DNA of 64,000 nt, from the NCBI GenBank assembly GCA_964057225.1, contig OZ059899.1:9920001-9984000 (forward strand), in the 5' to 3' direction. The DNA is from Auanema rhodensis (Eukaryota; Animalia; Nematoda). The translations under genes and the position numbers were made by a program. Positions 1 to 56,291 of the stretch are shown here, piece by piece. The stretch's first letter is position 1. Each line of letters starts with the position of its first letter. The notes under the pieces are model-generated. The model searched no databases and was not told where the DNA came from. It saw nothing but the letters and a program-made list of their open reading frames with translations.

Positions 1-409
1 GATTTTTCTACGATTACATAAAACTCTCGTTTGATATACAAAAAGGAGAGGAATAACGTTTCCAGGATATCAATGATATCGAAACTAGTGATATTGTAGA
101 AAAATGTAATGTCAGCTCCATAGTTTTTCTCTTAATTTCTCTCATCACAATAGTCTTAGTTTTTTTTCATAAGAGTTTCTGAAATCTTAGTTGAACAAGG
201 CAGTATATATTTTTTTCTGGAATTCGAAAGCATTTGGGATGGAAATTAGAACGAAAAGAACTAGTTTTTTCTATTTTAAAACAAACAATAATAAACAAAA
301 TGAAAAGATTGTTAGATATCCAATTTAAACTTATACATTTACTTCGATAAAGAGCCTATTAGTTTGAAATTTTATGTCTTACAGTTCTCCAACAGAACAG
401 ACTGATCCT

Positions 410-654
410 GATTGCTCTATGATTACATAAAACTCTCGTTTGATATAAAAGCATATTGGATAGAAATTTCGAAAGCATTTTGGATGGAAATTAGAACGAA
501 AAGAACTAATTTTTTCTATTTTAAAACAAACAATAATAAACAAAATGAAAAGATTGTTAGATATCCAATTTTAACTCATACATTTACTTCGATGAAGAGC
601 CTATTAGATTGAAATTTTATGTCTTACAGTTCTCCAACAGAACAGACTGATCCT
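410..654 (+). repeat. Representative S monomer (245 bp)
   Basis: The head is followed directly by AAAGCATATTGGATAGAAATTTCG and then the shared tail. It lacks the GAATTC site present in L and T. Confidence 0.97.
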
Positions 655-1063
655 GATTTCTCTATGATTTCATGAAACTCTCGTTTGATATACAAAAAGG
701 AGAGGAATAACGTTTCCAGGATATCAATGATATCGAATCTAGTGATATTGTAGAAAAATGCAATGTCAGCTCCATAGTTTTTCTCTTAATTTCTCTCATC
801 ACAATAGTCTTAGTTTTTTTCATAAGAGTTTCTGAAATCTTAGTTGAACAAGGCAGTATATATTTTTTTCTGGAATTCGAAAGCATTTGGGATGGAAATT
901 AGAAAGAAAAGAACTAGTTTTTCCTACTTTAAAACAAACAATAAGAAATAAAATGAAAAAGATTGTTAGATATCCAATTTAAACTTATACATTTACTTCG
1001 ATAAAGAGCCTATTAGTTTGAAATTTTATGTCTTACAGTTCTCCAACAGAACAGACTGATCCT

Positions 1064-1473
1064 GATTTCTCTATGATTACATAAAACTCTCGTTAGAAAT
1101 ACAAAATAGAGAGGAATAACGTTTCCAGGATATCAATGATATCGAATCTAGTGATATTATAGAAAAATGTAATGTCAGCTCCATAGTTTTTCTCTTAATT
1201 TCTCTCATCACAATAGTCTTAGTTTTTTTTCATAAGAGTTTCTGAAATCTTAGTTGAACAAGGCAGTATATATTTTTTTCTGGAATTCGAAAGCATTTGG
1301 GATGGAAATTAGAAAGAAAAGAACTAGTTTTTCCTACTTTAAAACAAACAATAAGAAATAAAATAAAAAAGATTGTTAGATATCCAATTTAAACTTATAC
1401 ATTTACTACGATAAAGAGCCTATTAGTTTGAAATTTTATGTCTTACAGTTCTCCAACAGAACAGACTGATCCT
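1064..1473 (+). repeat. Representative L monomer (410 bp)
   Basis: Head, then a middle segment (GAGGAATAACGTTTCCAGGATATCAATGATATC...CTTAGTTGAACAAGGCAGTATATATTTTTTTCTGGAATTC), then the shared tail. Confidence 0.97.
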
Positions 1474-4400
1474 GATTTTTCTACGATTACATAAAACTCT
1501 CGTTTGATATAAAAGCATATTGGATAGAAATTTCGAAAGCATTTTGGATGGAAATTAGAACGAAAAGAACTAGTTTTTTCTATTTTAAAACAAACAATAA
1601 TAAACAAAATGAAAAGATTGTTAGATATCCAATTTAAACTTATACATTTACTTCGATAAAGAGCCTATTAGTTTGAAATTTTATGTCTAACAGTTCTCCA
1701 ACAGAACAGACTGATCCTGATTGCTCTATGATTACATAAAACTCTCGTTAGAAATACAAAATAGAGAGGAATAACGTTTCCAGGATATCAATGATATCGA
1801 ATCTAGTGATATTGTAGAAAAATGTAATGTCAGCTCCATAGTTTTTCTCTTAATTTCTCTCATCACAATAGTCTTAGTTTTTTTTCATAAGAGTTTCTGA
1901 AATCTTAGTTGAACAAGGCAGTATATATTTTTTTCTGGAATTCGAAAGCATTTGGGATGGAAATTAGAAAGAAAAGAACTAGTTTTTCCTACTTTAAAAC
2001 AAACAATAAGAAATAAAATGAAAAAGATTGTTAGATATCCAATTTAAACTTATACATTTACTTCGATAAAGAGCCTATTAGTTTGAAATTTTATGTCTTA
2101 CAGTTCTCCAACAGAACAGACTGATCCTGATTTCTCTATGATTACATAAAACTCTCGTTAGAAATACAAAATAGAGAGGAATAACGTTTCCAGGATATCA
2201 ATGATATCGAATCTAGTGATATTGTAGAAAAATGTAATGTCAGCTCCATAGTTTTTCTCTTAATTTCTCTCATCACAATAGTCTTAGTTTTTTTTCATAA
2301 GAGTTTCTGAAATCTTAGTTGAACAAGGCAGTATATATTTTTTTCTGGAATTCGAAAGCATTTGGGATGGAAATTAGAAAGAAAAGAACTAGTTTTTCCT
2401 ACTTTAAAACAAACAATAAGAAATAAAATAAAAAAGATTGTTAGATATCCAATTTAAACTTATACATTTACTACGATAAAGAGCCTATTAGTTTGAAATT
2501 TTATGTCTTACAGTTCTCCAACAGAACAGACTGATCCTGATTTTTCTACGATTACATAAAACTCTCGTTTGATATAAAAGCATATTGAATAGAAATTTCG
2601 AAAGCATTTTGGATGGAAATTAGAACGAAAAGAACTAGTTTTTTCTATTTTAAAACAAACAATAATAAACAAAATGAAAAGATTGTTAGATATCCAATTT
2701 AAACTTATACATTTACTTCGATAAAGAGCCTATTAGTTTGAAATTTTATGTCTTACAGTTCTCCAACAGAACAGACTGATCCTGATTGCTCTATGATTAC
2801 ATAAAACTCTCGTTTGATATAAAAGCATATTGGATAGAAATTTCGAAAGCATTTTGGATGGAAATTAGAACGAAAAGAACTAGTTTTTCGATTTTAAAAC
2901 AAACAATAATAAACAAAATGAAAAGATTGTTAGATATCCAATTTAAACTTATACATTTACTTCGATAAAGAGCCTATTAGTTTGAAATTTTATGTCTTAC
3001 AGTTCTCCAACAGAACAGACTGATCCTGATTTCTCTATGATTACATAAAACTCTCGTTTGATATAGAAGCATATTGGATAGAAATTTCGAAAGCATTTTG
3101 GATGGAAATTAGAACGAAAAGAACTAGTTTTTTCTATTTTAAAACAAACAATAATAAACAAAATGAAAAGATTGTTAGATATCCAATTTTAACTTATACA
3201 TTTACTTCGATGAAGAGCCTATTAGATTGAATTTTTATGTCTTACAGTTCTCCAACAGAACAGACTGATCCTGATTTTTCTACGATTACATAAAACTCTC
3301 GTTTGATATACAAAAAGGAGAGGAATAACGTTTCCAGGATTTCAATGATATCGGAACTAGTGATATTGTAGAAAAATGTAATGTCAGCTCCATAGTTTTT
3401 CTCTTAATTTCTCTCATCACAATAGTCTTAGTTTTTTTTCATAAGAGTTTCTGAAATCTTAGTTGAACAAGGCAGTATATATTTTTTTCTGGAATTCGAA
3501 AGCATTTGGGATGGAAATTAGAAAGAAAAGAACTAGTTTTTCCTACTTTAAAACAAACAATAAGAAATAAAATGAAAAAGATTGTTAGATATCCAATTTA
3601 AACTTATACATTTACTTCGATAAAGAGCCTATTAGTTTGAAATTTTATGTCTTACAGTTCTCCAACAGAACAGACTGATCCTGATTGCTCTATGATTACA
3701 TAAAACTCTCGTTTGATATAAAAGCATATTGGATAGAAATTTCGAAAGCATTTTGGATGGAAATTAGAACGAAAAGAACTAATTTTTTCTATTTTAAAAC
3801 AAACAATAATAAACAAAATGAAAAGATTGTTAGATATCCAATTTTAACTTATACATTTACTTCGATGAAGAGCCTATTAGATTGAATTTTTATGTCTTAC
3901 AGTTCTCCAACAGAACAGACTTATCCTGATTGCTCTATGATTACATAAAACTCTCGTTTGATATAGAAAAAGGAGAGGAATAACGTTTCCAGGATATCAA
4001 TGATATCGAATCTAGTGATATTGTAGAAAAATGTAATGTCAGCTCCATAGTTTTTCTCTTAATTTCTCTCATCACAATAGTCTTAGTTTTTTTTCATAAG
4101 AGTTTCTGAAATCTTAGTTGAACAAGGCAGTATATATTTTTTTCTGGAATTCGAAAGCATTTGGGATGGAAATTAGAAAGAAAAGAACTAGTTTTTTCTA
4201 TTTTAAAACAAACAATAATAAACAAAATGAAAAGATTGTTAGATATCCAATTTAAACTTATACATTTACTTCGATAAAGAGCCTATTAGTTTGAAATTTT
4301 ATGTCTTACAGTTCTCCAACAGAACAGACTGATCCTGATTTTTCTATGATTACATAAAACTCTCGTTTGATATACAGAATAGAGAGGAATAACGTTTCCA

Positions 4401-5355
4401 GGATATCAATGATATCGAATCTAGTGATATTGTGGAAAAATGTAATGTCAGCTCCATAGTTTTTCTCTTAATTTCTCTCATCACAATAGTCTTAGTTTTT
4501 TTTTCATAAGAGTTTCTGAAATCTTAGTTGAACAAGGCAGTATATATTTTTTTCTGGAATTCGAAAGCATTTGGGATGGAAATTAGAAAGAAAAGAACTA
4601 GTTTTTCTTACTTTAAAACAAACAATAAGAAATAAAATGAAAAAGATTGTTAGATATCCAATTTAAACTTATACATTTACTTCGATAAAGAGCCTATTAG
4701 TTTGAAATTTTATGTCTTACAGTTCTCCAACAGAACAGACTGATCCTGATTTCTCTATGATTACATAAAACTCTCGTTTGATATACAAAAAGGAGAGGAA
4801 TAACGTTTCCAGGATATCAATGATATCGAATCTAGTGATATTGTAGAAAAATGTCATGTCAGCTCCATAGTTTTTCTCTTAATTTCTCTCATCACAATAG
4901 TCTTAGTTTTTTTTCATGAGAGTTTCTGAAATCTTAGTTGAACAAGGCAGTATATATTTTTTTCTGGAATTCGAAAGCATTTAGGATGGAAATTAGAAAG
5001 AAAAGAACTAGTTTTTCCTACTTTAAAACAAACAATAAGAAATAAAATGAAAAAGATTGTTAGATATCCAATTTAAACTTATACATTTACTTCGATAAAG
5101 AGCCTATTAGTTTGAAATTTTATGTCTTACAGTTCTCCAACAGAACAGACTGATCCTGATTTCTCTATGATTTCATAAAACTCTCGTTTGATATACAAAA
5201 AGGAGAGGAATAACGTTTCCAGGATATCAATGATATCGAATCTAGTGATATTGTAGAAAAATGTAATGTCAGCTCCATAGTTTTTCTCTTAATTTCTCTC
5301 ATCACAATAGTCTTAGTTTTTTTTCATAAGAGTTTCTGAAATCTTAGTTGAACAA

Positions 5356-5428
5356 GGCCGCGTGGCGCAATGGATAACGCGTCTGCCTACGGAGCAGAAG
5401 ATTGTAGGTTCGAATCCTGCCGTGATCG
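5356..5428 (+). tRNA. tRNA-Arg-ACG: tRNA-Arg(ACG), copy 1, variant G70A (C3.A70 acceptor-stem mismatch)
   Basis: 73-nt cloverleaf with anticodon arm TCTGC-CTACGGA-GCAGA and T-arm GTAGG-TTCGAAT-CCTGC. The 3' end reads CGTGATCG rather than CGTGGTCG (A at 5425). Confidence 0.9.
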
Positions 5429-5432
5429 TAAA

Positions 5433-5439
5433 TTTTTTT
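5433..5439 (+). terminator. RNA polymerase III terminator (T7), representative
   Basis: TAAA then TTTTTTT directly after the tRNA 3' end. The same run occurs at 6451-6457, 7468-7474, 10783-10789, 13522-13528, 14375-14381 and 32171-32177. Oligo-T is the established Pol III terminator. Confidence 0.85.
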
Positions 5440-6373
5440 CATTTCACTTGTCATTCATAAAAATCGAATTTATCTTCTTCAACGATTTGTTTTGCAATGT
5501 GTCATAAGAATTTCATAGTTGAACAAAACGTTTTTTAAGAAGTTTTTTTGTTGTCAACATATATATTTTCCTGGAATTCGAAAGCATTTGGGATGGAAAT
5601 TAGAAAGAAAAGAACTAGTTTTTCCTACTTTAAAACAAACAATAAGAAATAAAATGAAAAAGATTGTTAGATATCCAATTTAAACTTATACATTTACTTT
5701 GATAAAGAGCCTATTAGTTTGAAATTTTATGTCTTACAGTTCTCCAACAGAACAGACTGATCCTGATTTCTCTATGATTACATAAAACTCTCGTTTGATA
5801 TACAAAATAGAGAGGAATAACGTTTCCAGGATATCAATGATATCGAATCTAGTGATATTGTGGAAAAATGTGATGTCAGCTCCATAGTTTTTCTCTTAAT
5901 TTCTCTCATCACAATAGTCTTAGTTTTTTTTTCATAAGAGTTTCTGAAATCTTAGTTGAACAAGGCAGTATATATTTTTTTCTGGAATTCGAAAGCATTT
6001 AGGATGGAAATTAGAAAGAAAAGAACTAGTTTTTCCTACTTTAAAACAAACAATAAGAAATAAAATGAAAAAGATTGTTAGATATCCAATTTAAACTTAT
6101 ACATTTACTTCGATAAAGAGCCTATTAGTTTGAAATTTTATGTCTTACAGTTCTCCAACAGAACAGACTGATCCTGATTTCTCTATGATTTCATAAAACT
6201 CTCGTTTGATATACAAAAAGGAGAGGAATAACGTTTCCAGGATATCAATGATATCGAATCTAGTGATATTGTAGAAAAATGTAATGTCAGCTCCATAGTT
6301 TTTCTCTTAATTTCTCTCATCACAATAGTCTTAGTTTTTTTTCATAAGAGTTTCTGAAATCTTAGTTGAACAA

Positions 6374-6446
6374 GGCCGCGTGGCGCAATGGATAACGCGT
6401 CTGCCTACGGAGCAGAAGATTGTAGGTTCGAATCCTGCCGTGGTCG
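6374..6446 (+). tRNA. tRNA-Arg-ACG: tRNA-Arg(ACG), copy 2, array-consensus sequence
   Basis: GGCCGCGTGGCGCAATGGATAACGCGTCTGCCTACGGAGCAGAAGATTGTAGGTTCGAATCCTGCCGTGGTCG. Acceptor stem GGCCGCG/CGTGGTC, A box TGGCGCAATGG, B box GGTTCGAATCC, ACG anticodon, discriminator G, no encoded CCA (eukaryotic type). Confidence 0.97.
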
Positions 6447-7192
6447 TAAATTTTTTTCATTTCACTTGTCATTTATAAAAATCGAATTTATCTTCTTCAA
6501 CGATTTGTTTTGCAATGTGTCATAAGAATTTCATAGTTGAACAAAACGTTTTTTAAGAAGTTTTTTTGTTGTCAACATATATATTTTCCTGGAATTGGAA
6601 AGCATTTGGGATGGAAATTAGAAAGAAAAGAACTAGTTTTTTCTATTTTAAAACAAACAATAATAAACAAAATGAAAAGATTGTTAGATATCCAATTTAA
6701 ACTTATACATTTACTTCGATAAAGAGCCTATTAGTTTGAAATTTTATGTCTTACAGTTCTCCAACAGAACAGACTGATCCTGATTTCTCTATGATTACAT
6801 AAAACTCTCGTTTGATATACAAAATAGAGAGGAATAACGTTTCCAGGATATCAATGATATCGAATCTAGTGATATTGTGGAAAAATGTAATGTCAGCTCC
6901 ATAGTTTTTCTCTTAATTTCTCTCATCACAATAGTCTTAGTTTTTTTTTCATAAGAGTTTCTGAAATCTTAGTTGAACAAGGCAGTATATATTTTTTTCT
7001 GGAATTCGAAAGCATTTAGGATGGAAATTAGAAAGAAAAGAACTAGTTTTTCCTACTTTAAAACAAACAATAAGAAATAAAATGAAAAAGATTGTTAGAT
7101 ATCCAATTTAAACTTATACATTTACTTCGATAAAGAGCCTATTAGTTTGAAATTTTATGTCTTACAGTTCTCCAACAGAACAGACTGATCCT

Positions 7193-7799
7193 GATTTCTC
7201 TATGATTACATAAAACTCTCGTTTGATATACAAAAAGGAGAGGAATAACGTTTCCAGGATATCAATGATATCGAATCTAGTGATATTGTAGAAAAATGTA
7301 ATGTCAGCTCCATAGTTTTTCTCTTAATTTCTCTCATCACAATAGTCTTAGTTTTTTTTCATAAGAGTTTCTGAAATCTTAGTTGAACAAGGCCGCGTGG
7401 CGCAATGGATAACGCGTCTGCCTACGGAGCAGAAGATTGTAGGTTCGAATCCTGCCGTGGTCGTAAATTTTTTTCATTTCACTTGTCATTTATAAAAATC
7501 GAATTTATCTTCTTCAACGATTTGTTTTGCAATGTGTCATAAGAATTTCATAGTTGAACAAAACGTTTTTTAAGAAGTTTTTTTGTTGTCAACATATATA
7601 TTTTCCTGGAATTCGAAAGCATTTGGGATGGAAATTAGAAAGAAAAGAACTAGTTTTTCCTACTTTAAAACAAACAATAAGAAATAAAATGAAAAAGATT
7701 GTTAGATATCCAATTTAAACTTATACATTTACTTCGATAAAGAGCCTATTAGTTTGAAATTTTATGTCTTACAGTTCTCCAACAGAACAGACTGATCCT
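7193..7799 (+). repeat. Representative T monomer (607 bp) containing tRNA-Arg(ACG)
   Basis: Matches L up to ...GTTGAACAAGGC, then 200 bp of tRNA body and 3' flank, then rejoins L at ATATATATTTTCCTGGAATTC. Other T monomers start at 5158, 6176, 10508, 13247, 14100 and 31896. Confidence 0.97.
7391..7463 (+). tRNA. tRNA-Arg-ACG: tRNA-Arg(ACG), copy 3, array-consensus sequence
   Basis: Identical to copy 2; intact cloverleaf and A/B boxes. Confidence 0.97.
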
Positions 7800-10705
7800 G
7801 ATTTCTCTATGATTACATAAAACTTTCGTTTGATATAAAAGCATATTGGATAGAAATTTCGAAAGCATTTTGGATGGAAATTAGAACGAAAAGAACTAGT
7901 TTTTTCTATTTTAAAACAAACAATAATAAACAAAATGAAAAGAATGTTAGATATCCAATTTAAACTTATACATTTACTTCGATAAAGAGCCTATTAGTTT
8001 GAAATTTTATGTCTTACAGTTCTCCAACAGAACAGACTGATCCTGATTTCTCTATGATTACATAAAACTCTCGTTTGATATACAAAATAGAGAGGAATAA
8101 CGTTTCCAGGATATCAATGATATCGAATCTAGTGATATTGTGGAAAAATGTGATGTCAGCTCCATAGTTTTTCTCTTAATTTCTCTCATCACAATAGTCT
8201 TAGTTTTTTTTCATAAGAGTTTCTGAAATCTTAGTTGAACAAGGCAGTATATATTTTTTTCTGGAATTCGAAAGCATTTGGGATGGAAATTAGAAAGAAA
8301 AGAACTAGTTTTTTCTATTTTAAAACAAACAATAATAAACAAAATGAAAAGATTGTTAGATATCCAATTTAAACTTATACATTTACTTCGATAAAGAGCC
8401 TATTAGTTTGAAATTTTATGTCTTACAGTTCTCCAACAGAACAGACTGATCCTGATTTCTCTATGATTACATAAAACTCTCGTTTGATATACAAAATAGA
8501 GAGGAATAACGTTTCCAGGATATCAATGATATCGAATCTAGTGATATTGTGGAAAAATGTAATGTCAGCTCCATAGTTTTTCTCTTAATTTCTCTCATCA
8601 CAATAGTCTTAGTTTTTTTTTCATAAGAGTTTCTGAATTCTTAGTTGAACAAGGCAGTATATATTTTTTTCTGGAATTCGAAAGCATTTGGGATGGAAAT
8701 TAGAAAGAAAAGAACTAGTTTTTCTTACTTTAAAACAAACAATAAGAAATAAAATGAAAAAGATTGTTAGATATCCAATTTAAACTTATACATTTACTTC
8801 GATAAAGAGCCTATTAGTTTGAAATTTTATGTCTTACAGTTCTCCAACAGAACAGACTGATCCTGATTTCTCTATGATTACATAAAACTCTCGTTTGATA
8901 TACAAAAAGGAGAGGAATAACGTTTCCAGGATATCAATGATATCGAATCTAGTGATATTGTAGGAAAATGTAATGTCAGCTCCATAGTTTTTCTCTTAAT
9001 TTCTCTCATCACAATAGTCTTAGTTTTTTTTCATGAGAGTTTCTGAAATCTTAGTTGAACAAGGCAGTATATATTTTTTTCTGGAATTCGAAAGCATTTA
9101 GGATGGAAATTAGAAAGAAAAGAACTAGTTTTTCCTACTTTAAAACAAACAATAAGAAATAAAATGAAAAAGATTGTTAGATATCCAATTTAAACTTATA
9201 CATTTACTTCGATAAAGAGCCTATTAGTTTGAAATTTTATGTCTTACAGTTCTCCAACAGAACAGACTGATCCTGATTTCTCTATGATTACATAAAACTC
9301 TCGTTTGATATACAAAAAGGAGAGGAATAACGTTTCCAGGATATCAATGATATCGAATCTAGTGATATTGTGGAAAAATGTAATGTCAGCTCCATAGTTT
9401 TTCTCTTAATTTCTCTCATCACAATAGTCTTAGTTTTTTTTTCATAAGAGTTTCTGAAATCTTAGTTGAACAAGGCAGTATATATTTTTTTCTGGAATTC
9501 GAAAGCATTTGGGATGGAAATTAGAAAGAAAAGAACTAGTTTTTCCTACTTTAAAACAAACAATAAGAAATAAAATGAAAAAGATTGTTAGATATCCAAT
9601 TTAAACTTATTCATTTACTTCGATAAAGAGCCTATTAGTTTGAAATTTTATGTCTTACAGTTCTCCAACAGAACAGACTGATCCTGATTTCTCTATGATT
9701 ACATAAAACTCTCGTTTGATATACAAAATAGAGAGGAATAACGTTTCCAGGATATCAATGATATCGAATCTAGTGATATTGTAGAAAAATGTAATGTCAG
9801 CTCCAAAGTTTTTCTCTTAATTTCTCTCATCACAATAGTCTTAGTTTTTTTTTCATAAGAGTTTCTGAAATCTTAGTTGAACAAGGCAGTATATATTTTT
9901 TTCTGGAATTCGAAAGCATTTGGGATGGAAATTAGAAAGAAAAGAACTAGTTTTTCCTACTTTAAAACAAACAATAAGAAATAAAATGAAAAAAATTGTT
10001 AGATATCCAATTTAAACTTATTCATTTACTTCGATAAAGAGCCTATTAGTTTGAAATTTTATGTCTTACAGTTCTCCAACAGAACAGACTGATCCTGATT
10101 TCTCTATGATTACATAAAACTCTCGTTTGATATACAAAATAGAGAGGAATAACGTTTCCAGGATATCAATGATATCGAATCTAGTGATATTGTGGAAAAA
10201 TGTAATGTCAGCTCCATAGTTTTTCTCTTAATTTCTCTCATCACAATAGTCTTAGTTTTTTTTTCATAAGAGTTTCTGAAATCTTAGTTGAACAAGGCAG
10301 TATATATTTTTTTCTGGAATTCGAAAGCATTTGGGATGAAAATTAGAAAGAAAAGAACTAGTTTTTCCTACTTTAAAACAAACAATAAGAAATAAAATGA
10401 AAAAGATTGTTAGATATCCAATTTAAACTTATACATTTACTTCGATAAAGAGCCTATTAGTTTGAAATTTTATGTCTTACAGTTCTCCAACAGAACAGAC
10501 TGATCCTGATTTCTCTATGATTACATAAAACTCTCGTTTGATATACAAAAAGGAGAGGAATAACGTTTCCAGGATATCAATGATATCGAATCTAGTGATA
10601 TTGTAGAAAAATGTAATGTCAGCTCCATAGTTTTTCTCTTAATTTCTCTCATCACAATAGTCTTAGTTTTTTTTCATAAGAGTTTCTGAAATCTTAGTTG
10701 AACAA

Positions 10706-10778
10706 GGCCGCGTGGCGCAATGGATAACGCGTCTGCCTACGGAGCAGAAGATTGTAGGTTCGAATCCTGCCGTGGTCG
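10706..10778 (+). tRNA. tRNA-Arg-ACG: tRNA-Arg(ACG), copy 4, array-consensus sequence
   Basis: Identical to copy 2. Confidence 0.97.
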
Positions 10779-13444
10779 TAAATTTTTTTCATTTCACTTG
10801 TCATTTATAAAAATCGAATTTATCTTCTTCAACGATTTGTTTTGCAATGTGTCATAAGAATTTCATAGTTGAACAAAACGTTTTTTAAGAAGTTTTTTTG
10901 TTGTCAACATATATATTTTCCTGGAATTCGAAAGCATTTGGGATGGAAATTAGAAAGAAAAGAACTAGTTTTTCCTACTTTAAAACAAACAATAAGAAAT
11001 AAAATGAAAAAGATTGTTAGATATCCAATTTAAACTTATACATTTACTTCGATAAAGAGCCTATTAGTTTGAAATTTTATGTCTTACAGTTCTCCAACAG
11101 AACAGACTGATCCTGATTTCTCTATGATTACATAAAACTTTCGTTTGATATAAAAGCATATTGGATAGAAATTTCGAAAGCATTTTGGATGGAAATTAGA
11201 ACGAAAAGAACTAGTTTTTTCTATTTTAAAACAAACAATAATAAACAAAATGAAAAGATTGTTAGATATCCAATTTAAACTTATACATTTACTTCGATAA
11301 AGAGCCTATTAGTTTGAAATTTTATGTCTTACAGTTCTCCAACAGAACAGACTGATCCTGATTTCTCTATGATTACATAAAACTCTCGTTTGATATACAA
11401 AATAGAGAGGAATAACGTTTCCAGGATATCAATGATATCGAATCTAGTGATATTGTGAAAAAATGTGATGTCAGCTCCATAGTTTTTCTCTTAATTTCTC
11501 TCATCACAATAGTCTTAGTTTTTTTTTCATAAGAGTTTCTGAAATCTTAGTTGAACAAGGCAGTATATATTTTTTTCTGGAATTCGAAAGCATTTCGGAT
11601 GGAAATTAGAAAGAAAAGAACTAGTTTTTCTTACTTTAAAACAAACAATAAGAAATAAAATGAAAAAGATTGTTAGATATCCAATTTAAACTTATACATT
11701 TACTTCGATAAAGAGCCTATTAGTTTGAAATTTTATGTCTTACAGTTCTCCAACAGAACAGACTGATCCTGATTTCTCTATGATTACATAAAACTTTCGT
11801 TTGATATAAAAGCATATTGGATAGAAATTTCGAAAGCATTTTGGATGGAAATTAGAACGAAAAGAACTAGTTTTTTCTATTTTAAAACAAACAATAATAA
11901 ACAAAATGAAAAGATTGTTAGATATCCAATTTAAACTTATACATTTACTTCGATAAAGAGCCTATTAGTTTGAAATTTTATGTCTTACAGTTCTCCAACA
12001 GAACAGACTGATCCTGATTTCTCTATGATTACATAAAACTCTCGTTTGATATACAAAATAGAGAGGAATAACGTTTCCAGGATATCAATGATATCGAATC
12101 TAGTGATATTGTGGAAAAATGTGATGTCAGCTCCATAGTTTTTCTCTTAATTTCTCTCATCACAATAGTCTTAGTTTTTTTTTCATAAGAGTTTCTGAAA
12201 TCTTAGTTGAACAAGGCAGTATATATTTTTTTCTGGAATTCGAAAGCATTTGGGATAGAAATTAGAAAGAAAAGAACTAGTTTTTCTTACTTTAAAACAA
12301 ACAATGAGAAATAAAATGAAAAAGATTGTTAGATATCCAATTTAAACTTATACATTTACTTCGATAAAGAGCCTATTAGTTTGAAATTTTATGTCTTACA
12401 GTTCTCCAACAGAACAGACTGATCCTGATTTCTCTATGATTACATAAAACTCTCGTTTGATATACAAAAAGGAGAGGAATAACGTTTCCAGGATATCAAT
12501 GATATCGAATCTAGTGATATTGTGGAGAAATGTAATGTCAGCTCCATAGTTTTTCTCTTAATTTCTCTCATCACAATAGTCTTAGTTTTTTTTCATGAGA
12601 GTTTCTGAAATCTTAGTTGAACAAGGCAGAATATATTTTTTTCTGGAATTCGAAAGCATTTAGGATGGAAATTAGAAAGAAAAGAACTAGTTTTTCCTAC
12701 TTTAAAACAAACAATAAGAAATAAAATGAAAAAGATTGTTAGATATCCAATTTAAACTTATACATTTACTTCGATAAAGAGCCTATTAGTTTGAAATTTT
12801 ATGTCTTACAGTTCTCCAACAGAACAGACTGATCCTGATTTCTCTATGATTACATAAAACTTTCGTTTGATATACAAAAAGGAGAGGAATAACGTTTCCA
12901 GGATATCAATGATATCGAATCTAGTGATATTGTAGAAAAATGTAATGTCAGCTCCATAGTTTTTCTCTTAATTTCTCTCATCACAATAGTCTTAGTTTTT
13001 TTTCATGAGAGTTTCTGAAATCTTAGTTGAACAAGGCAGTATATATTTTTTTCTGGAATTCGAAAGCATTTAGGATGGAAATTAGAAAGAAAAGAACTAG
13101 TTTTTCCTACTTTAAAACAAACAATAAGAAATAAAATGAAAAAGATTGTTAGATATCCAATTTATACTTATACATTTACTTCGATAAAGAGCCTATTAGT
13201 TTGAAATTTTATGTCTTACAGTTCTCCAACAGAACAGACTGATCCTGATTTCTCTATGATTTCATAAAACTCTCGTTTGATATACAAAAAGGAGAGGAAT
13301 AACGTTTCCAGGATATCAATGATATCGAATCTAGTGATATTGTAGAAAAATGTAATGTCAGCTCCATAGTTTTTCTCTTAATTTCTCTCATCACAATAGT
13401 CTTAGTTTTTTTTCATAAGAGTTTCTGAAATCTTAGTTGAACAA

Positions 13445-13517
13445 GGCCGCGTGGCGCAATGGATAACGCGTCTGCCTACGGAGCAGAAGATTGTAGGTTC
13501 GAATCCTGCCGTGGTCG
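13445..13517 (+). tRNA. tRNA-Arg-ACG: tRNA-Arg(ACG), copy 5, array-consensus sequence
   Basis: Identical to copy 2. Confidence 0.97.
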
Positions 13518-14297
13518 TAAATTTTTTTCATTTCACTTGTCATTTATAAAAATCGAATTCATCTTCTTCAACGATTTGTTTTGCAATGTGTCATAAGAAT
13601 TTCATAGTTGAACAAAACGTTTTTTAAGAAGTTTTTTTGTTGTCAACATATATATTTTCCTGGAATTCGAAAGCATTTGGGATGGAAATTAGAAAGAAAA
13701 GAACTAGTTTTTCCTACTTTAAAACAAACAATAAGAAATAAAATGAAAAAGATTGTTAGATATCCAATTTAAACTTATACATTTACTTCGATAAAGAGCC
13801 TATTAGTTTGAAATTTTATGTCTTACAGTTCTCCAACAGAACAGACTGATCCTGATTTCTCTATGATTACATAAAACTCTCGTTTGATATAAAAGCATAT
13901 TGGATAGAAATTTCGAAAGCATTTTGGATGAAAATTAGAAAGAAAAGAACTAGTTTTTCCTACTTTAAAACAAACAATAAGAAATAAAATGAAAAAGATT
14001 GTTAGATATCCAATTTAAACTTATACATTTACTTCGATAAAGAGCCTATTAGTTTGAAATTTTATGTCTTACAGTTCTCCAACAGAACAGACTGATCCTG
14101 ATTTCTCTATGATTACATAAAACTCTCGTTTGATATACAAAAAGGAGAGGAATAACGTTTCCAGGATATCAATGATATCGAATCTAGTGATATTGTAGAA
14201 AAATGTAATGTCAGCTCCATAGTTTTTCTCTTTATTTCTCTCATCACAATAGTCTTAGTTTTTTTTCATAAGAGTTTCTGAAATCTTAGTTGAACAA

Positions 14298-14370
14298 GGC
14301 CGCGTGGCGCAATGGATAACGCATCTGCCTACGGAGCAGAAGATTGTAGGTTCGAATCCTGCCGTGGTCG
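14298..14370 (+). tRNA. tRNA-Arg-ACG: tRNA-Arg(ACG), copy 6, variant G26A
   Basis: Reads AACGCATCTG instead of AACGCGTCTG (A at 14323, hinge position 26). All stems remain intact. Confidence 0.93.
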
Positions 14371-16340
14371 TAAATTTTTTTCATTTCACTTGTCATTTAT
14401 AAAAATCGAATTTATCCTCTTCAACGATTATTTTTGCAATGTGTCATAAGAATTTCATAGTTGAACAAAACGTTTTTTAAGAAGTTTTTTTGTTGTCAAC
14501 ATATATATTTTCCTGGAATTCGAAAGCATTTGGGATGGAAATTAGAAAGAAAAGAACTAGTTTTTTCTACTTTAAAACAAACAATAAGAAATAAAATGAA
14601 AAAGATTGTTAGATATCCAATTTAAACTTATACATTTACTTTGATAAAGAGCCTATTAGTTTGAAATTTTATGTCTTACAGTTCTCCAACAGAACAGACT
14701 GATCCTGATTTCTCTATGATTACATAAAACTCTTGTTTGATATACAAAATAGAGAGGAATAACGTTTCCAGGATATCAATGATATCGAATCTAGTGATAT
14801 TGTAGAAAAATGTAATGTCAGCTTCATAGTTTTTCTCTTAATTTCTCTCATCACAATAGTCTTAGTTTTTTTTCATAAGAGTTTCTGAAATCTTAGTTGA
14901 ACAAGGCAGTATATATTTTTTTCTGGAATTCGAAAGCATTTGGGATGGAAATTAGAAAGAAAAGAACTAGTTTTTCCTACTTTAAAACAAACAATAAGAA
15001 ATAAAATGAAAAAGATTGTTAGATATCCATTTTAAACTTATACATTTACTTCGATAAAGAGCCTATTAGTTTGAAATTTTATGTCTTACAGTTCTCCAAC
15101 AGAACAGACTGATCCTGATTTTTCTACGATTACATAAAACTCTCGTTTGATATAAAAGCATATTGGATAGAAATTTCGAAAGCATTTTGGATGGAAATTA
15201 GAACGAAAAGAACTAGTTTTTTCTATTTTAAAACAAACAATAATAAACAAAATGAAAAGATTGTTAGATATCCAATTTAAACTTATACATTTACTTCGAT
15301 AAAGAGCCTATTAGTTTGAAATTTTATGTCTTACAGTTCTCCAACAGAACAGACTGATCCTGATTGCTCTATGATTACATAAAACTCTCGTTTGATATAA
15401 AAGCATATTGGATAGAAATTTCGAAAGCATTTTGGATGGAAATTAGAACGAAAAGAACTAGTTTTTCTATTTTAAAACAAACAATAATAAACAAAATGAA
15501 AAGATTGTTAGATATCCAATTTAAACTTATACATTTACTTCGATAAAGAGCCTATTAGTTTGAAATTTTATGTCTTACAGTTCTCCAACAGAACAGACTG
15601 ATCCTGATTGCTCTATGATTACATAAAACTCTCGTTTGATATAAAAGCATATTGGATAGAAATTTCGAAAGCATTTTGGATGGAAATTAGAACGAAAAGA
15701 ACTAGTTTTTCTATTTTAAAACAAACAATAATAAACAAAATGAAAAGATTGTTAGATATCCAATTTAAACTTATACATTTACTTCGATAAAGAGCCTATT
15801 AGTTTGAAATTTTATGTCTTACAGTTCTCCAACAGAACAGACTGATCCTGATTGCTCTATGATTACATAAAACTCTCGTTTGATATAGAAGCATATTGGA
15901 TAGAAATTTCGAAAGCATTTTGGATGGAAATTTGAAAGAAAAGAACTAGTTTTTTCTACTTTAAAACAAACAATAAGAAATAAAATGAAAAAGATTGTTA
16001 GATATCCAATGTAAACTTATACATTTACTTCGATAAAGAGCCTATTAGTTCGAAATTTTATGTCTTACAGTTCTCCAACAGAACAGACTGATCCTGATTT
16101 CTCTATGATTACATAAAACTCTCGTTTGATATAAAAGCATATTGGATAGAAATTTCGAAAGCATTTTGGATGGAAATTAGAACGAAAAGAACTAGTTTTT
16201 TCTATTTTAAAACAAACAATAATAAACAAAATGAAAAGATTGTTAGATATCCAATTTTAACTTATACATTTACTTCGATGAAGAGCCTATTAGATTGAAT
16301 TTTTATGTCTTACAGTTCTCCAACAGAACAGACTTATCCT

Positions 16341-18959
16341 GATTTTTCTACGATTACATAAAACTCTCGTTTGATATACAAAAAGGAGAGGAATAACGTT
16401 TCCAGGATATCAATGATATCGAATCTAGTGATATTGTAGAAAAATGTAATGTCAGCTCCATAGTTTTTCTCTTAATTTCTCTCATCACAATAGTCTTAGA
16501 TTTTTTCATAAGAGTTTCTGAAATCTTAGTTGAACAAGGCAGTATATATTTTTTTCTGGAATTCGAAAGCATTTGGGATGGAAATTAGAAAGAAAAGAAC
16601 TAGTTTTTCCTACTTTAAAACAAACAATAAGAAATAAAATGAAAAAGATTGTTAGATATCCAATTTAAACTTATACATTTACTTCGATAAAGAGCCTATT
16701 AGTTTGAAATTTTATGTTTTACAGTTCTCCAACAGAACAGACTGATCCTGATTTCTCTATGATTACATAAAACTCTCGTTTGATATAAAAGCATATTGGA
16801 TAGAAATTTCGAAAGCATTTTGGATGGAAATTAGAACGAAAAGAACTAGTTTTTTCTATTTTAAAACAAACAATAATAAACAAAATGAAAAGATTGTTAG
16901 ATATCCAATTTTAACTTATACATTTACTTCGATGAAGAGCCTATTAGATTGAATTTTCATGTCTTACAGTTCTCCAACAGAACAGACTTATCCTGATTTT
17001 TCTACGATTACATAAAACTCTCGTTTGATATACAGAAAGGGGAGGAATAACGTTTCCAGGATATCAATGATATCGAATCTAGTGATATTGTAGAAAAATG
17101 TAATGTCAGCTCCATAGTTTTTCTCTTAATTTCTCTCATCACAATAGTCTTAGTTTTTTTTCATAAGAGTTTCTGAAATCTTAGTTGAACAAGGCAGTAT
17201 ATATTTTTTTCTGGAATTCGAAAGCATTTGGGATGAAAATTAGAAAGAAAAGAACTAGTTTTTCCTACTTTAAAACAAACAATAAGAAATAAAATGAAAA
17301 AGATTGTTAGATATCCAATTTAAACTTATACATTTACTTCGATAAAGAGCCTATTAGTTTGAAATTTTATGTCTTACAGTTCTCCAACAGAACAGACTGA
17401 TCCTGATTTCTCTATGATTACATAAAACTCTCGTTTGATATAAAAGCATATTGGATAGAAATTTCGAAAGCATTTTGGATGGAAATTAGAACGAAAAGAA
17501 CTAGTTTTTTCTATTTTAAAACAAACAATAATAAACAAAATGAAAAGATTGTTAGATATCCAATTTTAACTTATACATTTACTTCGATGAAGAGCCTATT
17601 AGATTGAATTTTTATGTCTTACAGTTCTCCAACAGAACAGACTGATCCTGATTTTTCTACGATTACATAAAACTCTCGTTTGATATACAAAAAGGAGAGG
17701 AATAACGTTTCCAGGATATCAATGATATCGAATCTAGTGATATTGTAGAAAAATGTAATGTCAGCTCCATAGTTTTTCTCTTAATTTCTCTCATCACAAT
17801 AGTCTTAGTTTTTTTTCATAAGAGTTTCTGAAATCTTAGTTGAACAAGGCAGTATATATTTTTTTCTGGAATTCGAAAGCATTTGGGATGAAAATTAGAA
17901 AGAAAAGAACTAGTTTTTCCTACTTTAAAACAAACAATAAGAAATAAAATGAAAAAGATTGTTAGATATCCAATTTAAACTTATACATTTACTTCGATAA
18001 AGAGCCTATTAGTTTGAAATTTTATGTCTTACAGTTCTCCAACAGAACAGACTGATCCTGATTTCTCTATGATTACATAAAACTCTCGTTTGATATAAAA
18101 GCATATTGGATAGAAATTTCGAAAGCATTTTGGATGGAAATTAGAACGAAAAGAACTAGTTTTTTCTATTTTAAAACAAACAATAATAAACAAAATGAAA
18201 AGATTGTTAGATATCCAATTTTAACTTATACATTTACTTCGATGAAGAGCCTATTAGATTGAATTTTTATGTCTTACAGTTCTCCAACAGAACAGACTGA
18301 TCCTGATTTTTCTACGATTACATAAAACTCTCGTTTGATATACAAAAAGGAGAGGAATAACGTTTCCAGGATATCAATGATATCGAATCTAGTGATATTG
18401 TAGAAAAATGTAATGTCAGCTCCATAGTTTTTCACTTAATTTCTCTCATCACAATAGTCTTAGTTTTTTTTCATAAGAGTTTCTGAAATCTTAGTTGAAC
18501 AAGGCAGTATATATTTTTTTCTGGAATTCGAAAGCATTTGGGATGAAAATTAGAAAGAAAAGAACTAGTTTTTCCTACTTTAAAACAAACAATAAGAAAT
18601 AAAATGAAAAAGATTGTTAGATATCCAATTTAAACTTATACATTTACTTCGATAAAGAGCCTATTAGTTTGAAATTTTATGTCTTACAGTTCTCCAACAG
18701 AACAGACTGATCCTGATTTCTCTATGATTACATAAAACTCTCGTTTGATATAAAAGCATATTGGATAGAAATTTCAAAAGCATTTTGGATGGAAATTAGA
18801 ACGAAAAGAACTAGTTTTTTCTATTTTAAAACAAACAATAATAAACAAAATGAAAAGATTGTTAGATATCCAATTTTAACTTATACATTTACTTCGATGA
18901 AGAGCCTATTAGATTGAATTTTTATGTCTTACAGTTCTCCAACAGAACAGACTGATCCT
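16341..18959 (+). repeat. (L-S)x4 dimeric higher-order repeat, ~655 bp
   Basis: L starts at 16341, 16995, 17650 and 18305, each followed by one S. Confidence 0.88.
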
Positions 18960-21904
18960 GATTTTTCTACGATTACATAAAACTCTCGTTTGATATACAA
19001 AAAGGAGAGGAATAACGTTTCCAGGAAATCAATGATATCGAATCTAGTGATATTGTAGAAAAATGTAATGTCAGCTCCATAGTTTTTCTCTTAATTTCTC
19101 TCATCACAATAGTCTTAGTTTTTTTTCATAAGAGTTTCTGAAATCTTAGTTGAACAAGGCAGTATATATTTTTTTCTGGAATTCGAAAGCATTTGGGATG
19201 GAAATTAGAAAGAAAAGAACTAGTTTTTCCTACTTTAAAACAAACAATAAGAAATAAAATGAAAAAGATTGTTAGATATCCAATTTAAACTTATACATTT
19301 ACTTCGATAAAGAGCCTATTAGTTTGAAATTTTATGTCTTACAGTTCTCCAACAGAACAGACTGATCCTGATTTTTCTACGATTACATAAAACTCTCGTT
19401 TGATATACAAAAAGGAGAGGAATAACGTTTCCAGGATATCAATGATATCGAATCTAGTGATATTGTAGAAAAATGTAATGTCAGCTCCATAGTTTTTCTC
19501 TTAATTTCTCTCATCACAATAGTCTTAGTTTTTTTCATAAGAGTTTCTGAAATCTTAGTTGAACAAGGCAGTATATATTTTTTTCTGGAATTCGAAAGCA
19601 TTTGGGATGAAAATTAGAAAGAAAAGAACTAGTTTTTCCTACTTTAAAACAAACAATAAGAAATAAAATGAAAAAGATTGTTAGATATCCAATTTAAACT
19701 TATACATTTACTTCGATAAAGAGCCTATTAGTTTGAAATTTTATGTCTTACAGTTCTCCAACAGAACAGACTGATCCTGATTTCTCTATGATTACATAAA
19801 ACTCTCGTTTGATATAAAAGCATATTGGATAGAAATTTCGAAAGCATTTTGGATGGAAATTAGAAAGAAAAGAACTAGTTTTTCCTACTTTAAAACAAAC
19901 AATAAGAAATAAAATGAAAAAGATTGTTAGATATCCAATTTAAACTTATACATTTACTTCGATAAAGAGCCTATTACTTTGAAATTTTATGTCTTACAGT
20001 TCTCCAACAGAACAGATTGATCCTGATTTCTCTATGATTACATAAAACTCTCGTTTGATACAAAAGCATATTGGATAGAAATTTCGAAAGCATTTTGGAT
20101 GGAAATTAGAACGAAAAGAACTAGTTTTTTCTATTTTAAAACAAACAATAATAAACAAAATGAAAAGATTGTTAGATATCCAATTTTAACTTATACATTT
20201 ACTTCGATGAAGAGCCTATTAGATTGAATTTTTATGTCTTACAGTTCTCCAACAGAACAGACTGATCCTGATTTTTCTACGATTACATAAAACTCTCGTT
20301 TGATATACAAAAAGGAGAGGAATAACGTTTCCAGGAAATCAATGATATCGAATCTAGTGATATTGTAGAAAAATGTAATGTCAGCTCCATAGTTTTTCTC
20401 TTAATTTCTCTCATCACAATAGTCTTAGTTTTTTTTCATAAGAGTTTCTGAAATCTTAGTTGAACAAGGCAGTATATATTTTTTTCTGGAATTCGAAAGC
20501 ATTTGGGATGAAAATTAGAAAGAAAAGAACTAGTTTTTCCTACTTTAAAACAAACAATAAGAAATAAAATGAAAAAGATTGTTAGATATCCAATTTAAAC
20601 TTATACATTTATTTCGATAAAGAGCCTATTAGTTTGAAATTTTATGTCTTACAGTTCTCCAACAGAACAGACTGATCCTGATTTTTCTACGATTACATAA
20701 AACTCTCGTTTGATATAAAAGCATATTGGATAGAAATTTCGAAAGCATTTTGGATGGAAATTAGAACGAAAAGAACTAGTTTTTTCTATTTTAAAACAAA
20801 CAATAATAAACAAAATGAAAAGATTGTTAGATATCCAATTTAAACTTATACATTTACTTCGATAAAGAGCCTATTAGTTTGAAATTTTATGTCTTACAGT
20901 TCTCCAACAGAACAGACTGATCCTGATTGCTCTATGATTACATAAAACTCTCGTTTGATATAAAAGCATATTGGATAGAAATTTCGAAAGCATTTTGGAT
21001 GGAAATTAGAACGAAAAGAACTAGTTTTTCTATTTTAAAACAAACAATAATAAACAAAATGAAAAGATTGTTAGATATCCAATTTAAACTTATACATTTA
21101 CTTCGATAAAGAGCCTATTAGTTTGAAATTTTATGTCTTACAGTTTTCCAACAGAACAGACTGATCCTGATTGCTCTATGATTACATAAAACTCTCGTTT
21201 GATATAAAAGCATATTGGATAGAAATTTCGAAAGCATTTTGGATGGAAATTAGAACGAAAAGAACTAGTTTTTCTATTTTAAAACAAACAATAATAAACA
21301 AAATGAAAAGATTGTTAGATATCCAATTTAAACTTATACATTTACTTCGATAAAGAGCCTATTAGTTTGAAATTTTATGTCTTACAGTTCTCCAACAGAA
21401 CAGACTGATCCTGATTGCTCTATGATTACATAAAACTCTCGTTTGATATAGAAGCATATTGGATAGAAATTTCGAAAGCATTTTGGATGGAAATTTGAAA
21501 GAAAAGAACTAGTTTTTCCTACTTTAAAACAAACAATAAGAAATAAAATGAAAAAGATTGTTAGATATCCAATTTAAACTTATACATTTACTTCGATGAA
21601 GAGCCTATTAGATTGAATTTTTATGTCTTACAGTTCTCCAACAGAACAGACTGATCCTGATTTCTCTATGATTACATAAAACTCTCGTTTGATATAAAAG
21701 CATATTGGATAGAAATTTCGAAAGCATTTTGGATGGAAATTTGAAAGAAAAGAACTAGTTTTTCCTACTTTAAAACAAACAATAAGAAATAAAATGAAAA
21801 AGATTGTTAGATATCCAATTTTAACTTATACATTTACTTCGATGAAGAGCCTATTAGATTGAATTTTTATGTCTTACAGTTCTCCAACAGAACAGACTGA
21901 TCCT

Positions 21905-32093: not shown

Positions 32094-32166
32094 GGCCGCG
32101 TGGCGCGATGGATAACGCATCTGCCTACGGAGCAGAAGATTGTAGGTTCGAATCCTGCCGTGGTCG
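32094..32166 (+). tRNA. tRNA-Arg-ACG: tRNA-Arg(ACG), copy 7, variants A14G + G26A (possible pseudogene)
   Basis: Reads TGGCGCGATGG (G at 32107 replaces near-invariant A14 in the A box) and AACGCATCTG (A at 32119). Stems, anticodon and B box are intact. Confidence 0.85.
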
Positions 32167-39900: not shown

Positions 39901-39949
39901 AGATTGAATTTTTATGTCTTACAGTTCTCCAACAGAACAGACTGATCCT

Positions 39950-56270: not shown

Positions 56271-56291
56271 ACTTTAAATCATAGAGAAATC
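56271..56291. other. Orientation-switch (inversion) breakpoint
   Basis: ...TTTTTCCTACTTTA[AA]TCATAGAGAAATC...: the forward L matches through 56278 and the reverse monomer matches from 56277. Confidence 0.96.

What the first reader, a model, noticed from the sequence alone, without database searches (positions are those of the whole stretch)
5158..14706. A satellite family apparently born from a tRNA-gene array: every L monomer keeps the 5' flank and first three bases of tRNA-Arg
Seen: T reads ...GTTGAACAA-GGC-CGCGTGG(tRNA)...GTCAAC-ATATATATTTTCCTGGAATTC, while L reads ...GTTGAACAA-GGC-AGTATATATTTTTTTCTGGAATTC. L therefore lacks exactly 200 bp (5359-5558 in copy 1): tRNA nt 4-73, the terminator and the 3' flank. 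There is a 1-bp C overlap and a net +3 bp of fixed local differences (607-200+3=410). The breakpoint lies inside the tRNA, leaving GGC in about 90 L copies. Inference: T is ancestral, one deletion made L, a further rearrangement made S, and the gene-less derivatives now outnumber T about 25:1. Established: tRNA-derived SINEs keep the tRNA body, and tandem tRNA arrays such as those of Entamoeba have tRNAs in every unit. Here the spacer was amplified and the gene lost, with all three stages in one array.
Basis: partly seen in the sequence, partly recalled or inferred. Interest (0 to 1): 0.85.

Follow-up and report, generated by a model that had tools for sequence, protein, structure and literature searches.

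The report
Satellite DNA descended from tRNA-Arg repeats
A nematode satellite array mixes a few 607-bp units that carry a whole tRNA-Arg gene with many shorter units that are the same sequence minus the gene, so it most likely shows a tRNA-gene repeat decaying into ordinary satellite DNA; this route is already known for ribosomal-gene repeats.

Summary
The whole 64-kb window is one satellite array of 7 T units (607 bp, each with a tRNA-Arg(ACG) gene), 90 L units (408-411 bp) and 91 S units (244-246 bp). All 90 L units read ...AACAAGGCAG and lack the tRNA body, its terminator and about 120 bp of 3' flank.

The reading needs two changes.
- Contigs from runs under three coded organism labels also hold empty units that read GGCCG|TATATA. 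That is a clean 199-bp gap after tRNA base 5, followed by the T-type tail. The window's GGCAG is one substitution away. So L most likely keeps five tRNA bases, the fourth mutated, not three bases plus 3 bp of filler.
- Contig depth puts T at roughly 10-20% of tail-bearing units genome-wide, against 7% in this window. This is a crude measure.

I favour deletion from T (about 0.7) but it is not proven. All three forms occur under all three labels, no informative outgroup was reached, and the monomer tree gives no polarity.

The array is built of higher-order repeats (655-bp S+L dimers dominate), block duplications and one foldback inversion. Spacer-derived satellites are known for rDNA and 5S rDNA; this is a tRNA-array variant. 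A first-stage note reports the same family in the window 60 kb upstream.

The parts
1..56278 (+). Satellite array in + orientation. It mixes T, L and S units, and the dominant period is 655 bp (S+L).
56279..64000 (-). The same satellite in inverted orientation, after a foldback junction. The inverted arms are 55900-56281 and 56419-56800.
   Evidence: 382-nt arms, 99% complementary, 137 nt between them.
4970..5576 (+). T unit 1 (607 bp), with tRNA-Arg(ACG) at 5356-5428. This copy has G70 changed to A, which breaks the C3-G70 pair.
   Evidence: (53.4 bits).
5361..5559 (+). The 199-bp segment present in T and absent from L. It holds tRNA bases 6-73, the T7 terminator and about 120 bp of 3' flank.
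5577..5987 (+). Example L unit. Its junction GGCAG|TATATAT lies at 5964-5975.
5988..6594 (+). T unit 2, with the tRNA at 6374-6446.
7005..7611 (+). T unit 3, with the tRNA at 7391-7463. This unit was the reference for laying the public-run contigs.
7612..7857 (+). Example S unit. It is head bases 1-226 plus a 20-nt near-copy of the head start (7838-7857).
10320..10926 (+). T unit 4, with the tRNA at 10706-10778.
13059..13665 (+). T unit 5, with the tRNA at 13445-13517.
13912..14518 (+). T unit 6, with the tRNA at 14298-14370.
31708..32314 (+). T unit 7, with the tRNA at 32094-32166 carrying A14 changed to G. It lies in a block (31444-34796) that is 99.0% identical to 13648-16998.

Best explanation
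A 607-bp stretch around one tRNA-Arg(ACG) gene was amplified head to tail, as first-stage notes report for other tRNA genes of this nematode genome.

One unit then lost 199 bp in a single blunt deletion. The loss ran from tRNA base 6 through the Pol III terminator and about 120 bp of 3' flank. It left the 5' flank and the bases GGCCG. That empty unit lost the A box, B box and terminator and can no longer be a Pol III gene.

The empty unit spread by unequal exchange and block duplication. In the lineage that fills this window it acquired a C-to-A change (GGCAG) and a longer T run, giving L.

A second deletion removed the tail and was patched with a 20-nt copy of the adjoining head start, giving S.

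S and L were then co-amplified as higher-order repeats (655-bp S+L dimers, 5S+L blocks), with multi-kb block duplications and one foldback inversion.

Shown: the anatomy, the junctions, the counts, the repeat hierarchy, and the presence of all forms in runs under three organism labels.
Inferred: the direction (T first), the single origin of the empty units, and the repair mechanisms.
For: 1. L and T are colinear and about 98-100% identical on both sides of one gap. 90 of 90 L units share one junction.

2. Contigs of public runs hold a second empty junction, AACAAGGCCG|TATATA.TTTCCTG. It appears as a skip of 199 bp with no filler (X1, side 44) and as matching loose ends in X1 (5 contigs) and X4 (2 contigs). 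In X7 the related form is deeper than the GGCAGT form (1678 against 813).

3. The four empty-junction variants are each one step from GGCCGT and two steps from one another. So the founder empty unit carried five correct tRNA 5' bases. A deletion explains that for free. An insertion needs about a 1-in-1000 coincidence or a 5-nt microhomology.

4. The T-specific part runs about 120 bp past the T7 terminator and has no A tail, so it is not a retro-copy.

5. Copies of the tRNA at other loci in X4 and X7 leave the T sequence at 7386 and at 7471-7480, on both sides. One X4 12.6-kb contig matches only 7391-7474. Among the rows shown, none joins the T 3' flank to another 5' flank.

6. The T-specific 3' flank has 10 sites polymorphic at 10% or more, shared across the three organism labels. 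So T is old, not a recent insertion. The tRNA has 0 of 73 such sites (Fisher p=0.015 against the flank).

7. The T tRNAs have an intact cloverleaf, B box GGTTCGAATCC and terminator.

8. First-stage notes, unchecked, report tRNA-Asp, tRNA-His and tRNA-Met arrays in the same genome.
Against: - No polarity from phylogeny. T units fall in an unresolved polytomy among L units and need 3 label changes on the tree.
- All three forms are present under all three organism labels examined. The fourth label gave only two depth-2 contigs. So no outgroup shows a pure-T or a pure-L state.
- The junction series T / GGCCG-empty / GGCAG-empty can formally be read in either direction.
- Only 18 of 84 loose ends and 15 of 31 joints were displayed, so a donor locus could have been missed.
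- Within the window the tRNA is no better conserved than its flank (3 of 73 against 5 of 130 variable sites). Two of the seven copies carry probably harmful changes, A14G and C3-A70.
- A possible decayed copy of the 5' flank inside the T 3' flank is not significant (p=0.02 to 0.5 depending on scoring).
Confidence: 0.7

Rival explanations
1. Insertion. The empty unit came first. A DNA fragment carrying tRNA-Arg bases 6-73 plus about 125 bp of its 3' flank was copied into it from another tRNA-Arg locus by microhomology-mediated template switching at GGCCG. This made T, which then spread modestly.
For: T is the rare form, 7 of 188 units here. T units cluster, 6 within 9.5 kb, and are very alike at 0.86% mean difference. 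Many other tRNA-Arg(ACG) copies exist, especially in X7, where tRNA depth exceeds the flank depth. Five-base microhomology is within the range used by replication-based repair (general knowledge).
Against: The other-locus tRNA-Arg copies that were shown differ in both flanks and at about 9 of 84 positions, so they are not donors. The insert would have to begin exactly at tRNA base 6 and restore a perfect acceptor stem. The T-specific flank is polymorphic and shared under three organism labels, so it is not young. The right-hand junction has no microhomology.
Confidence: 0.12
2. Capture. The original satellite was the 245-bp S-type head repeat. A roughly 385-bp piece of a tRNA-Arg locus (tail, gene and 3' flank) was captured into it to give T, and L arose from T by deletion. 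On this reading the satellite was not born from a tRNA array.
For: S is as numerous as L in the window. The head is the only part common to all units. Head haplotypes of the T type are shared with S.
Against: S has no sequence of its own. Its only private 20 nt is a 17-of-20 copy of the head start that follows it. That looks like a templated patch at a deletion joint, not an ancestral junction. Head-to-tail depth ratios in reads (0.9, 1.4 and 0.5) do not show S dominating genome-wide, though the measure is crude.
Confidence: 0.08
3. One reading: a 200-bp deletion after tRNA base 3 with a 1-bp C overlap and a 3-bp filler (AGT). The GGCCG empties in reads would then be independent second deletions.
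For: A pairwise alignment can be drawn this way. Deletions with 1-bp microhomology and short fillers are typical of polymerase-theta end joining in nematodes (general knowledge).
Against: It needs two or more independent deletions with ends within 2 bp of each other. A single deletion plus one substitution explains all four junction variants.
Confidence: 0.07

Closest known systems
Satellites derived from the spacers of tandem rRNA gene arrays: rDNA IGS-derived satellites in plants, the 5S rDNA-derived 5SHindIII satellite of Hoplias, and PcP190 of frogs (PMC12692304; PMC4201667; PMC11675491)
   Same: A tandem array of RNA genes seeds a non-coding satellite that shares spacer sequence with it. 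The gene is lost or truncated, and the derivative outgrows the parent.
   Different: The parent here is a tRNA gene unit, not rDNA. The parent and derivative units are still interleaved in one array. PcP190 keeps most of the transcribed 5S region, whereas here 68 of 73 gene bases are gone.
Tandem tRNA gene arrays: Entamoeba (PMC2652664), the Arabidopsis chromosome 1 Tyr-Tyr-Ser array (PMC2886086), the human 1q23.3 tRNA VNTR (PMC4041453), and tandem tRNA blocks in germline-restricted DNA of Auanema rhodense (preprint 10.64898/2026.08.27.747507)
   Same: Head-to-tail units, each built around a Pol III tRNA gene. The T units here fit that description.
   Different: In those arrays every unit carries genes. 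Here only 7 of 188 units do, and the rest are deletion derivatives.
tRNA-related or SINE-derived tandem repeats: newt PolIII/TAN from tRNA-Glu retroposition, Xenopus OAX, Rana/PolIII, and SINE-derived satellites of reptiles (cited in PMC12054243; PMC10702118)
   Same: Satellite DNA with a tRNA connection.
   Different: Those repeats keep the tRNA-like body with its promoter boxes and arose through retroposition. Here the body is what was lost. The T-specific DNA runs past the terminator and shows no retroposition marks.

Membership tests
Tandem tRNA gene array (tDNA satellite) | Head-to-tail repetition of one unit | tested here: met
   188 consecutive units with no other sequence in 64 kb.
Tandem tRNA gene array (tDNA satellite) | Every unit, or nearly every unit, carries a tRNA gene | tested here: not met
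   7 of 188 units. Rfam at E<=1, run over 4900-15000, finds no other tRNA-like piece. No local similarity of the tRNA to the rest of the unit.
Tandem tRNA gene array (tDNA satellite) | Genes look functional (cloverleaf, A and B boxes, T-run terminator) | tested here: met
   53-58 bits, B box GGTTCGAATCC, and a T7 run 4 nt downstream. Two of seven copies carry A14G or a C3-A70 mismatch. Expression was not tested.
tRNA-derived SINE / SINE-derived satellite | The repeat keeps a tRNA-related body with internal promoter boxes | tested here: not met
   L keeps 5 of 73 bases and S keeps none.
tRNA-derived SINE / SINE-derived satellite | Marks of retroposition (copy ends at the transcript end, A-rich tail, target duplications) | tested here: not met
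   The T-specific DNA extends about 120 bp beyond the Pol III terminator. There is no A tail.
Satellite derived from the spacer of a tandem RNA-gene array (rDNA IGS / 5S type) | The monomer is homologous to the spacer of a gene-bearing tandem unit | tested here: met
   L equals T minus 199-200 bp and is otherwise about 98-100% identical.
Satellite derived from the spacer of a tandem RNA-gene array (rDNA IGS / 5S type) | The gene-bearing unit is ancestral to the gene-less one | tested here: inconclusive
   Junction logic favours it. The tree is uninformative, and no outgroup state was obtained.
Satellite derived from the spacer of a tandem RNA-gene array (rDNA IGS / 5S type) | The parent array is ribosomal (45S or 5S) | tested here: not met
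   The parent gene is tRNA-Arg(ACG).
Higher-order-repeat satellite | Multi-monomer blocks repeat with higher identity than neighbouring monomers share | tested here: met
   The best self-match lag is 655 bp (S+L), then 410 bp. Recurring haplotype strings include S3-S4-S10-S6-S8-L9. A 3.35-kb block is duplicated at 99.0%.

The most novel reading that the evidence does not exclude
In this nematode, tRNA-gene arrays sit in satellite blocks that may be germline-restricted, that is, removed from somatic cells by programmed DNA elimination. This is reported for tandem tRNA blocks in Auanema rhodense. Genes confined there cannot serve the soma, so selection on them relaxes and gene-less deletion derivatives take over. 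On this reading tRNA arrays are a recurrent birthplace of satellites in such genomes. This Arg family would be the advanced stage of a series whose earlier stages are the Asp, His and Met arrays.
Probability: 0.2. Interest if true: 0.7.

Novelty: new variant of a known kind. Interest (0 to 1): 0.5.

Why it matters
Few satellites have a traceable birth. Here the parent unit, a probable founder empty unit and two derived monomer types coexist with base-exact junctions. The steps from a Pol III gene repeat to bulk satellite (deletion, patching, higher-order amplification) can therefore be read directly. It extends to tRNA genes a route that is documented for rDNA and 5S arrays. If the array proves to be germline-restricted, it would link satellite birth to programmed DNA elimination. 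The case also warns annotators: tRNA counts in such genomes include satellite-embedded copies of uncertain use.

Tried and rejected
- Monomer tree of the 389 shared columns of 97 T and L units. Branches are too short, and T lies in a polytomy with L. It gives no polarity and shows only local clustering.
- A decayed copy of the 5' flank (TCATAAGA.TTTC...TAGTTGAACAA) inside the T 3' flank, which would have tied T-specific DNA to shared DNA. Shuffle tests give p=0.5, 0.2 and 0.02 under three scorings, so I do not rely on it.
- Hidden decayed tRNA pieces elsewhere in the unit. None found (at E<=1, p=0.2 and 0.6).
- Weak Y_RNA matches in the tail (23 bits against a threshold of 38, E 0.3-0.6). I treat them as chance.
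- One metagenome scan with an 18-mer spanning the junction. It returned 9 loci, all matching only 16-23 nt around the pattern or short low-identity stretches there, so all are chance.
- Coding potential. There is no ORF of 90 aa or more in the window.
- Organism identity. Run labels are coded. Papers on nematode DNA elimination describe a very similar genome type in Auanema rhodense, but give no unit of 245, 410 or 607 bp in the text, and no supplement is held. Identity is not established.
- Assembly artefact. Rejected, because all junctions recur in independent runs.
Full report
WHAT IS THERE

The whole 64-kb window is one AT-rich satellite array with no ORF of 90 aa or more. A 31-nt head anchor cuts it into 188 consecutive units. 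Seven are 607 bp (T), 90 are 408-411 bp (L) and 91 are 244-246 bp (S). Units run on the + strand to about 56278 and on the - strand after that.

ARAGORN finds seven tRNA-Arg(ACG) genes, one per T unit. Rfam scores the six in range at 53-58 bits against a gathering score of 29. Each gene has the B box GGTTCGAATCC and a T7 run 4 nt past its 3' end.

CHECK OF THE OBSERVATION

- The T and L consensus sequences align without ambiguity for 389 bp, up to ...GTTGAACAAGGC. T then has 200 bp that L lacks, and both end in ...CTGGAA.
- All 90 L units read AACAAGGCAG, with 84 identical across the whole 42-nt junction region. All 7 T units read AACAAGGCCGCGTGG.
- S is head bases 1-226 followed by 20 nt (AAAGCATATTGGATAGAAAT). 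That 20 nt is a 17-of-20 copy of the head start that comes next.

EVIDENCE FROM PUBLIC RUNS

The T unit 7005-7650 was laid against contigs of four public runs under four coded organism labels.

- Labels A, B and C all hold the shared parts and the T-specific 3' flank.
- All three also hold the L junction (7393 to 7594 with AGT between, or the matching loose ends) and the S junction (7230 back to 7005 with the 20-nt patch). The forms are therefore real and older than whatever separates these labels.
- Label D gave only two contigs at depth 2, which is uninformative.
- T-flank depth relative to tail depth is 0.21, 0.14 and 0.11 in A, B and C, against 7 of 97 (0.07) in the window. Summed contig depth is a crude measure. 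It still suggests T is commoner elsewhere, in line with the first-stage note on the window 60 kb upstream (s1-373180).

A second empty junction is the most useful result.

- It reads AACAAGGCCG directly joined to TATATA.TTTCCTG. This is a 199-bp skip (7395 to 7595) with no filler.
- It appears as a joint in X1 (side 44) and X7, and as concordant loose ends in X1 (5 contigs on each side) and X4 (2 contigs).
- In X7 the closely related form (7395 to 7594 with a T between) is deeper than the AGT form (1678 against 813).
- Minor forms GGCCTT and GGACGT also occur.
- All four variants are one step from GGCCGT and two steps from each other.

The simplest history is therefore one blunt 199-bp deletion (5361-5559 in copy 1) that left tRNA bases 1-5. 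Later point changes followed. The family filling this window has base 4 changed from C to A and a T run longer by two. The GGCCG form also keeps the T-type tail (TTTCCTG), so it sits between T and L.

DIRECTION

For deletion:
- The founder empty unit held five correct bases of the acceptor stem. A deletion explains that for free. An insertion needs a coincidence of about 1 in 1000, or a 5-nt microhomology at the left end with none at the right.
- The T-specific DNA runs about 120 bp past the terminator and has no A tail, so it is not a retro-copy.
- tRNA-Arg(ACG) copies at other loci in B and C leave the T sequence on both sides, at 7386 and at 7471-7480. The one long contig shown differs at 9 of 84 positions. 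No displayed record joins the T 3' flank to a foreign 5' flank.
- The T 3' flank carries 10 sites polymorphic at 10% or more, shared under all three labels. So T is not a recent arrival.
- The tRNA itself has no such site (0 of 73 against 10 of 130, p=0.015). That fits some constraint across the copy population.

Against certainty:
- The monomer tree is a polytomy with T scattered among L (3 label changes).
- No outgroup state was obtained.
- Only part of the joints and loose ends was displayed.
- Within the window the tRNA varies as much as its flank (3 of 73 against 5 of 130 sites). Two copies carry likely harmful changes, A14G at 32094 and G70A at 5356.

HOW THE ARRAY GREW

- Head haplotypes show two head classes and several recombinants, arranged in recurring strings. 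The main ones are S1-L0 and S13-L15 dimers and S3-S4-S10-S6-S8-L9 hexamers.
- The strongest self-match lag is 655 bp (S+L), ahead of 410 bp. Amplification therefore acts on multi-monomer blocks.
- The T unit at 31708 lies in a block of at least 3.35 kb that is 99.0% identical to 13648-16998. T units are carried along by block duplication.
- At about 56279 a + head joins a reverse-complement head. The arms are 382 nt long and 99% complementary, with 137 nt between them. This is a foldback junction.
- The S joint is a deletion with a short copy of adjacent sequence. It resembles the templated patches left by polymerase-theta end joining, which is prominent in the C. elegans germline. That comparison rests on general knowledge and is inference here.

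FUNCTION

- L and S lack the A box, B box and terminator, and match no Rfam family above threshold. They are non-coding satellite.
- Five of the seven T genes look competent for Pol III transcription. Expression was not tested, because the one read-laying run went on the DNA comparison.

COMPARISON WITH WHAT IS KNOWN

- Tandem tRNA arrays are known in Entamoeba (PMC2652664), Arabidopsis (PMC2886086) and human 1q23.3 (PMC4041453).
- A 2026 preprint on the nematode Auanema rhodense annotates 19,554 tRNA loci and places tandem tRNA blocks in germline-restricted DNA (10.64898/2026.08.27.747507). In all these arrays the units carry genes.
- tRNA-related satellites of amphibians and SINE-derived satellites keep the tRNA-like body (PMC12054243; PMC10702118).
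- Gene-less satellites derived from spacers are established for rDNA IGS and 5S arrays (PMC12692304; PMC4201667).
- The present case works like the spacer-derived type but starts from a tRNA unit, and it still has parent and offspring interleaved. I file it as a new variant of a known kind.
- First-stage notes (unchecked) report tRNA-Asp, tRNA-His and tRNA-Met arrays and a candidate elimination break site in the same genome. That motivates the germline-restriction reading in the novel case.
- The organism is a nematode according to those notes. Its identity was not established.

OPERATORS' NOTES

Noticed in passing
window 55900-56800 (switch at about 56279): Foldback junction. The array changes strand where a + head (to base ~58 of the unit) joins a reverse-complement head. 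The inverted arms are 382 nt long and 99% complementary, with 137 nt between them.
   Followed up: partly
window 13648-16998 and 31444-34796: A block of at least 3.35 kb (S-T-L-S-S-S-S...) is duplicated at 99.0% identity 17.8 kb away. It carries a T unit with it.
   Followed up: partly
window 1-56200: The dominant period is 655 bp (S+L dimer), not the 410-bp monomer. L units that follow an S carry a distinct head class, and 5S+L (~1636 bp) blocks recur six or more times.
   Followed up: partly
window 7838-7857 and every S unit end: The only S-private sequence is a 20-nt, 17-of-20 copy of the head start that follows it. TRF calls it a 24-bp, 2-copy repeat. It looks like a templated patch at a deletion joint.
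   Followed up: partly
window 7391-7474 as laid on runs X4 and X7: Other tRNA-Arg(ACG) copies with unrelated flanks exist. In X7 their summed depth exceeds that of the satellite around them, which hints at another high-copy tRNA-Arg locus or array under that organism label.
   Followed up: no
window 7523-7524 and 7551: The T units of this window mostly carry minority states in the 3' flank. The read contigs show the other base at 86-100% under all three organism labels, so this array holds a local T subfamily.
   Followed up: no
window 5516-5526 against 5346-5356: An 11-nt exact repeat TAGTTGAACAA, preceded by TCATAAGA.TTTC, occurs both upstream of the tRNA and inside its 3' flank. It may be the relic of an older ~170-bp duplication, but it is not statistically secure (p=0.02-0.5).
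   Followed up: yes
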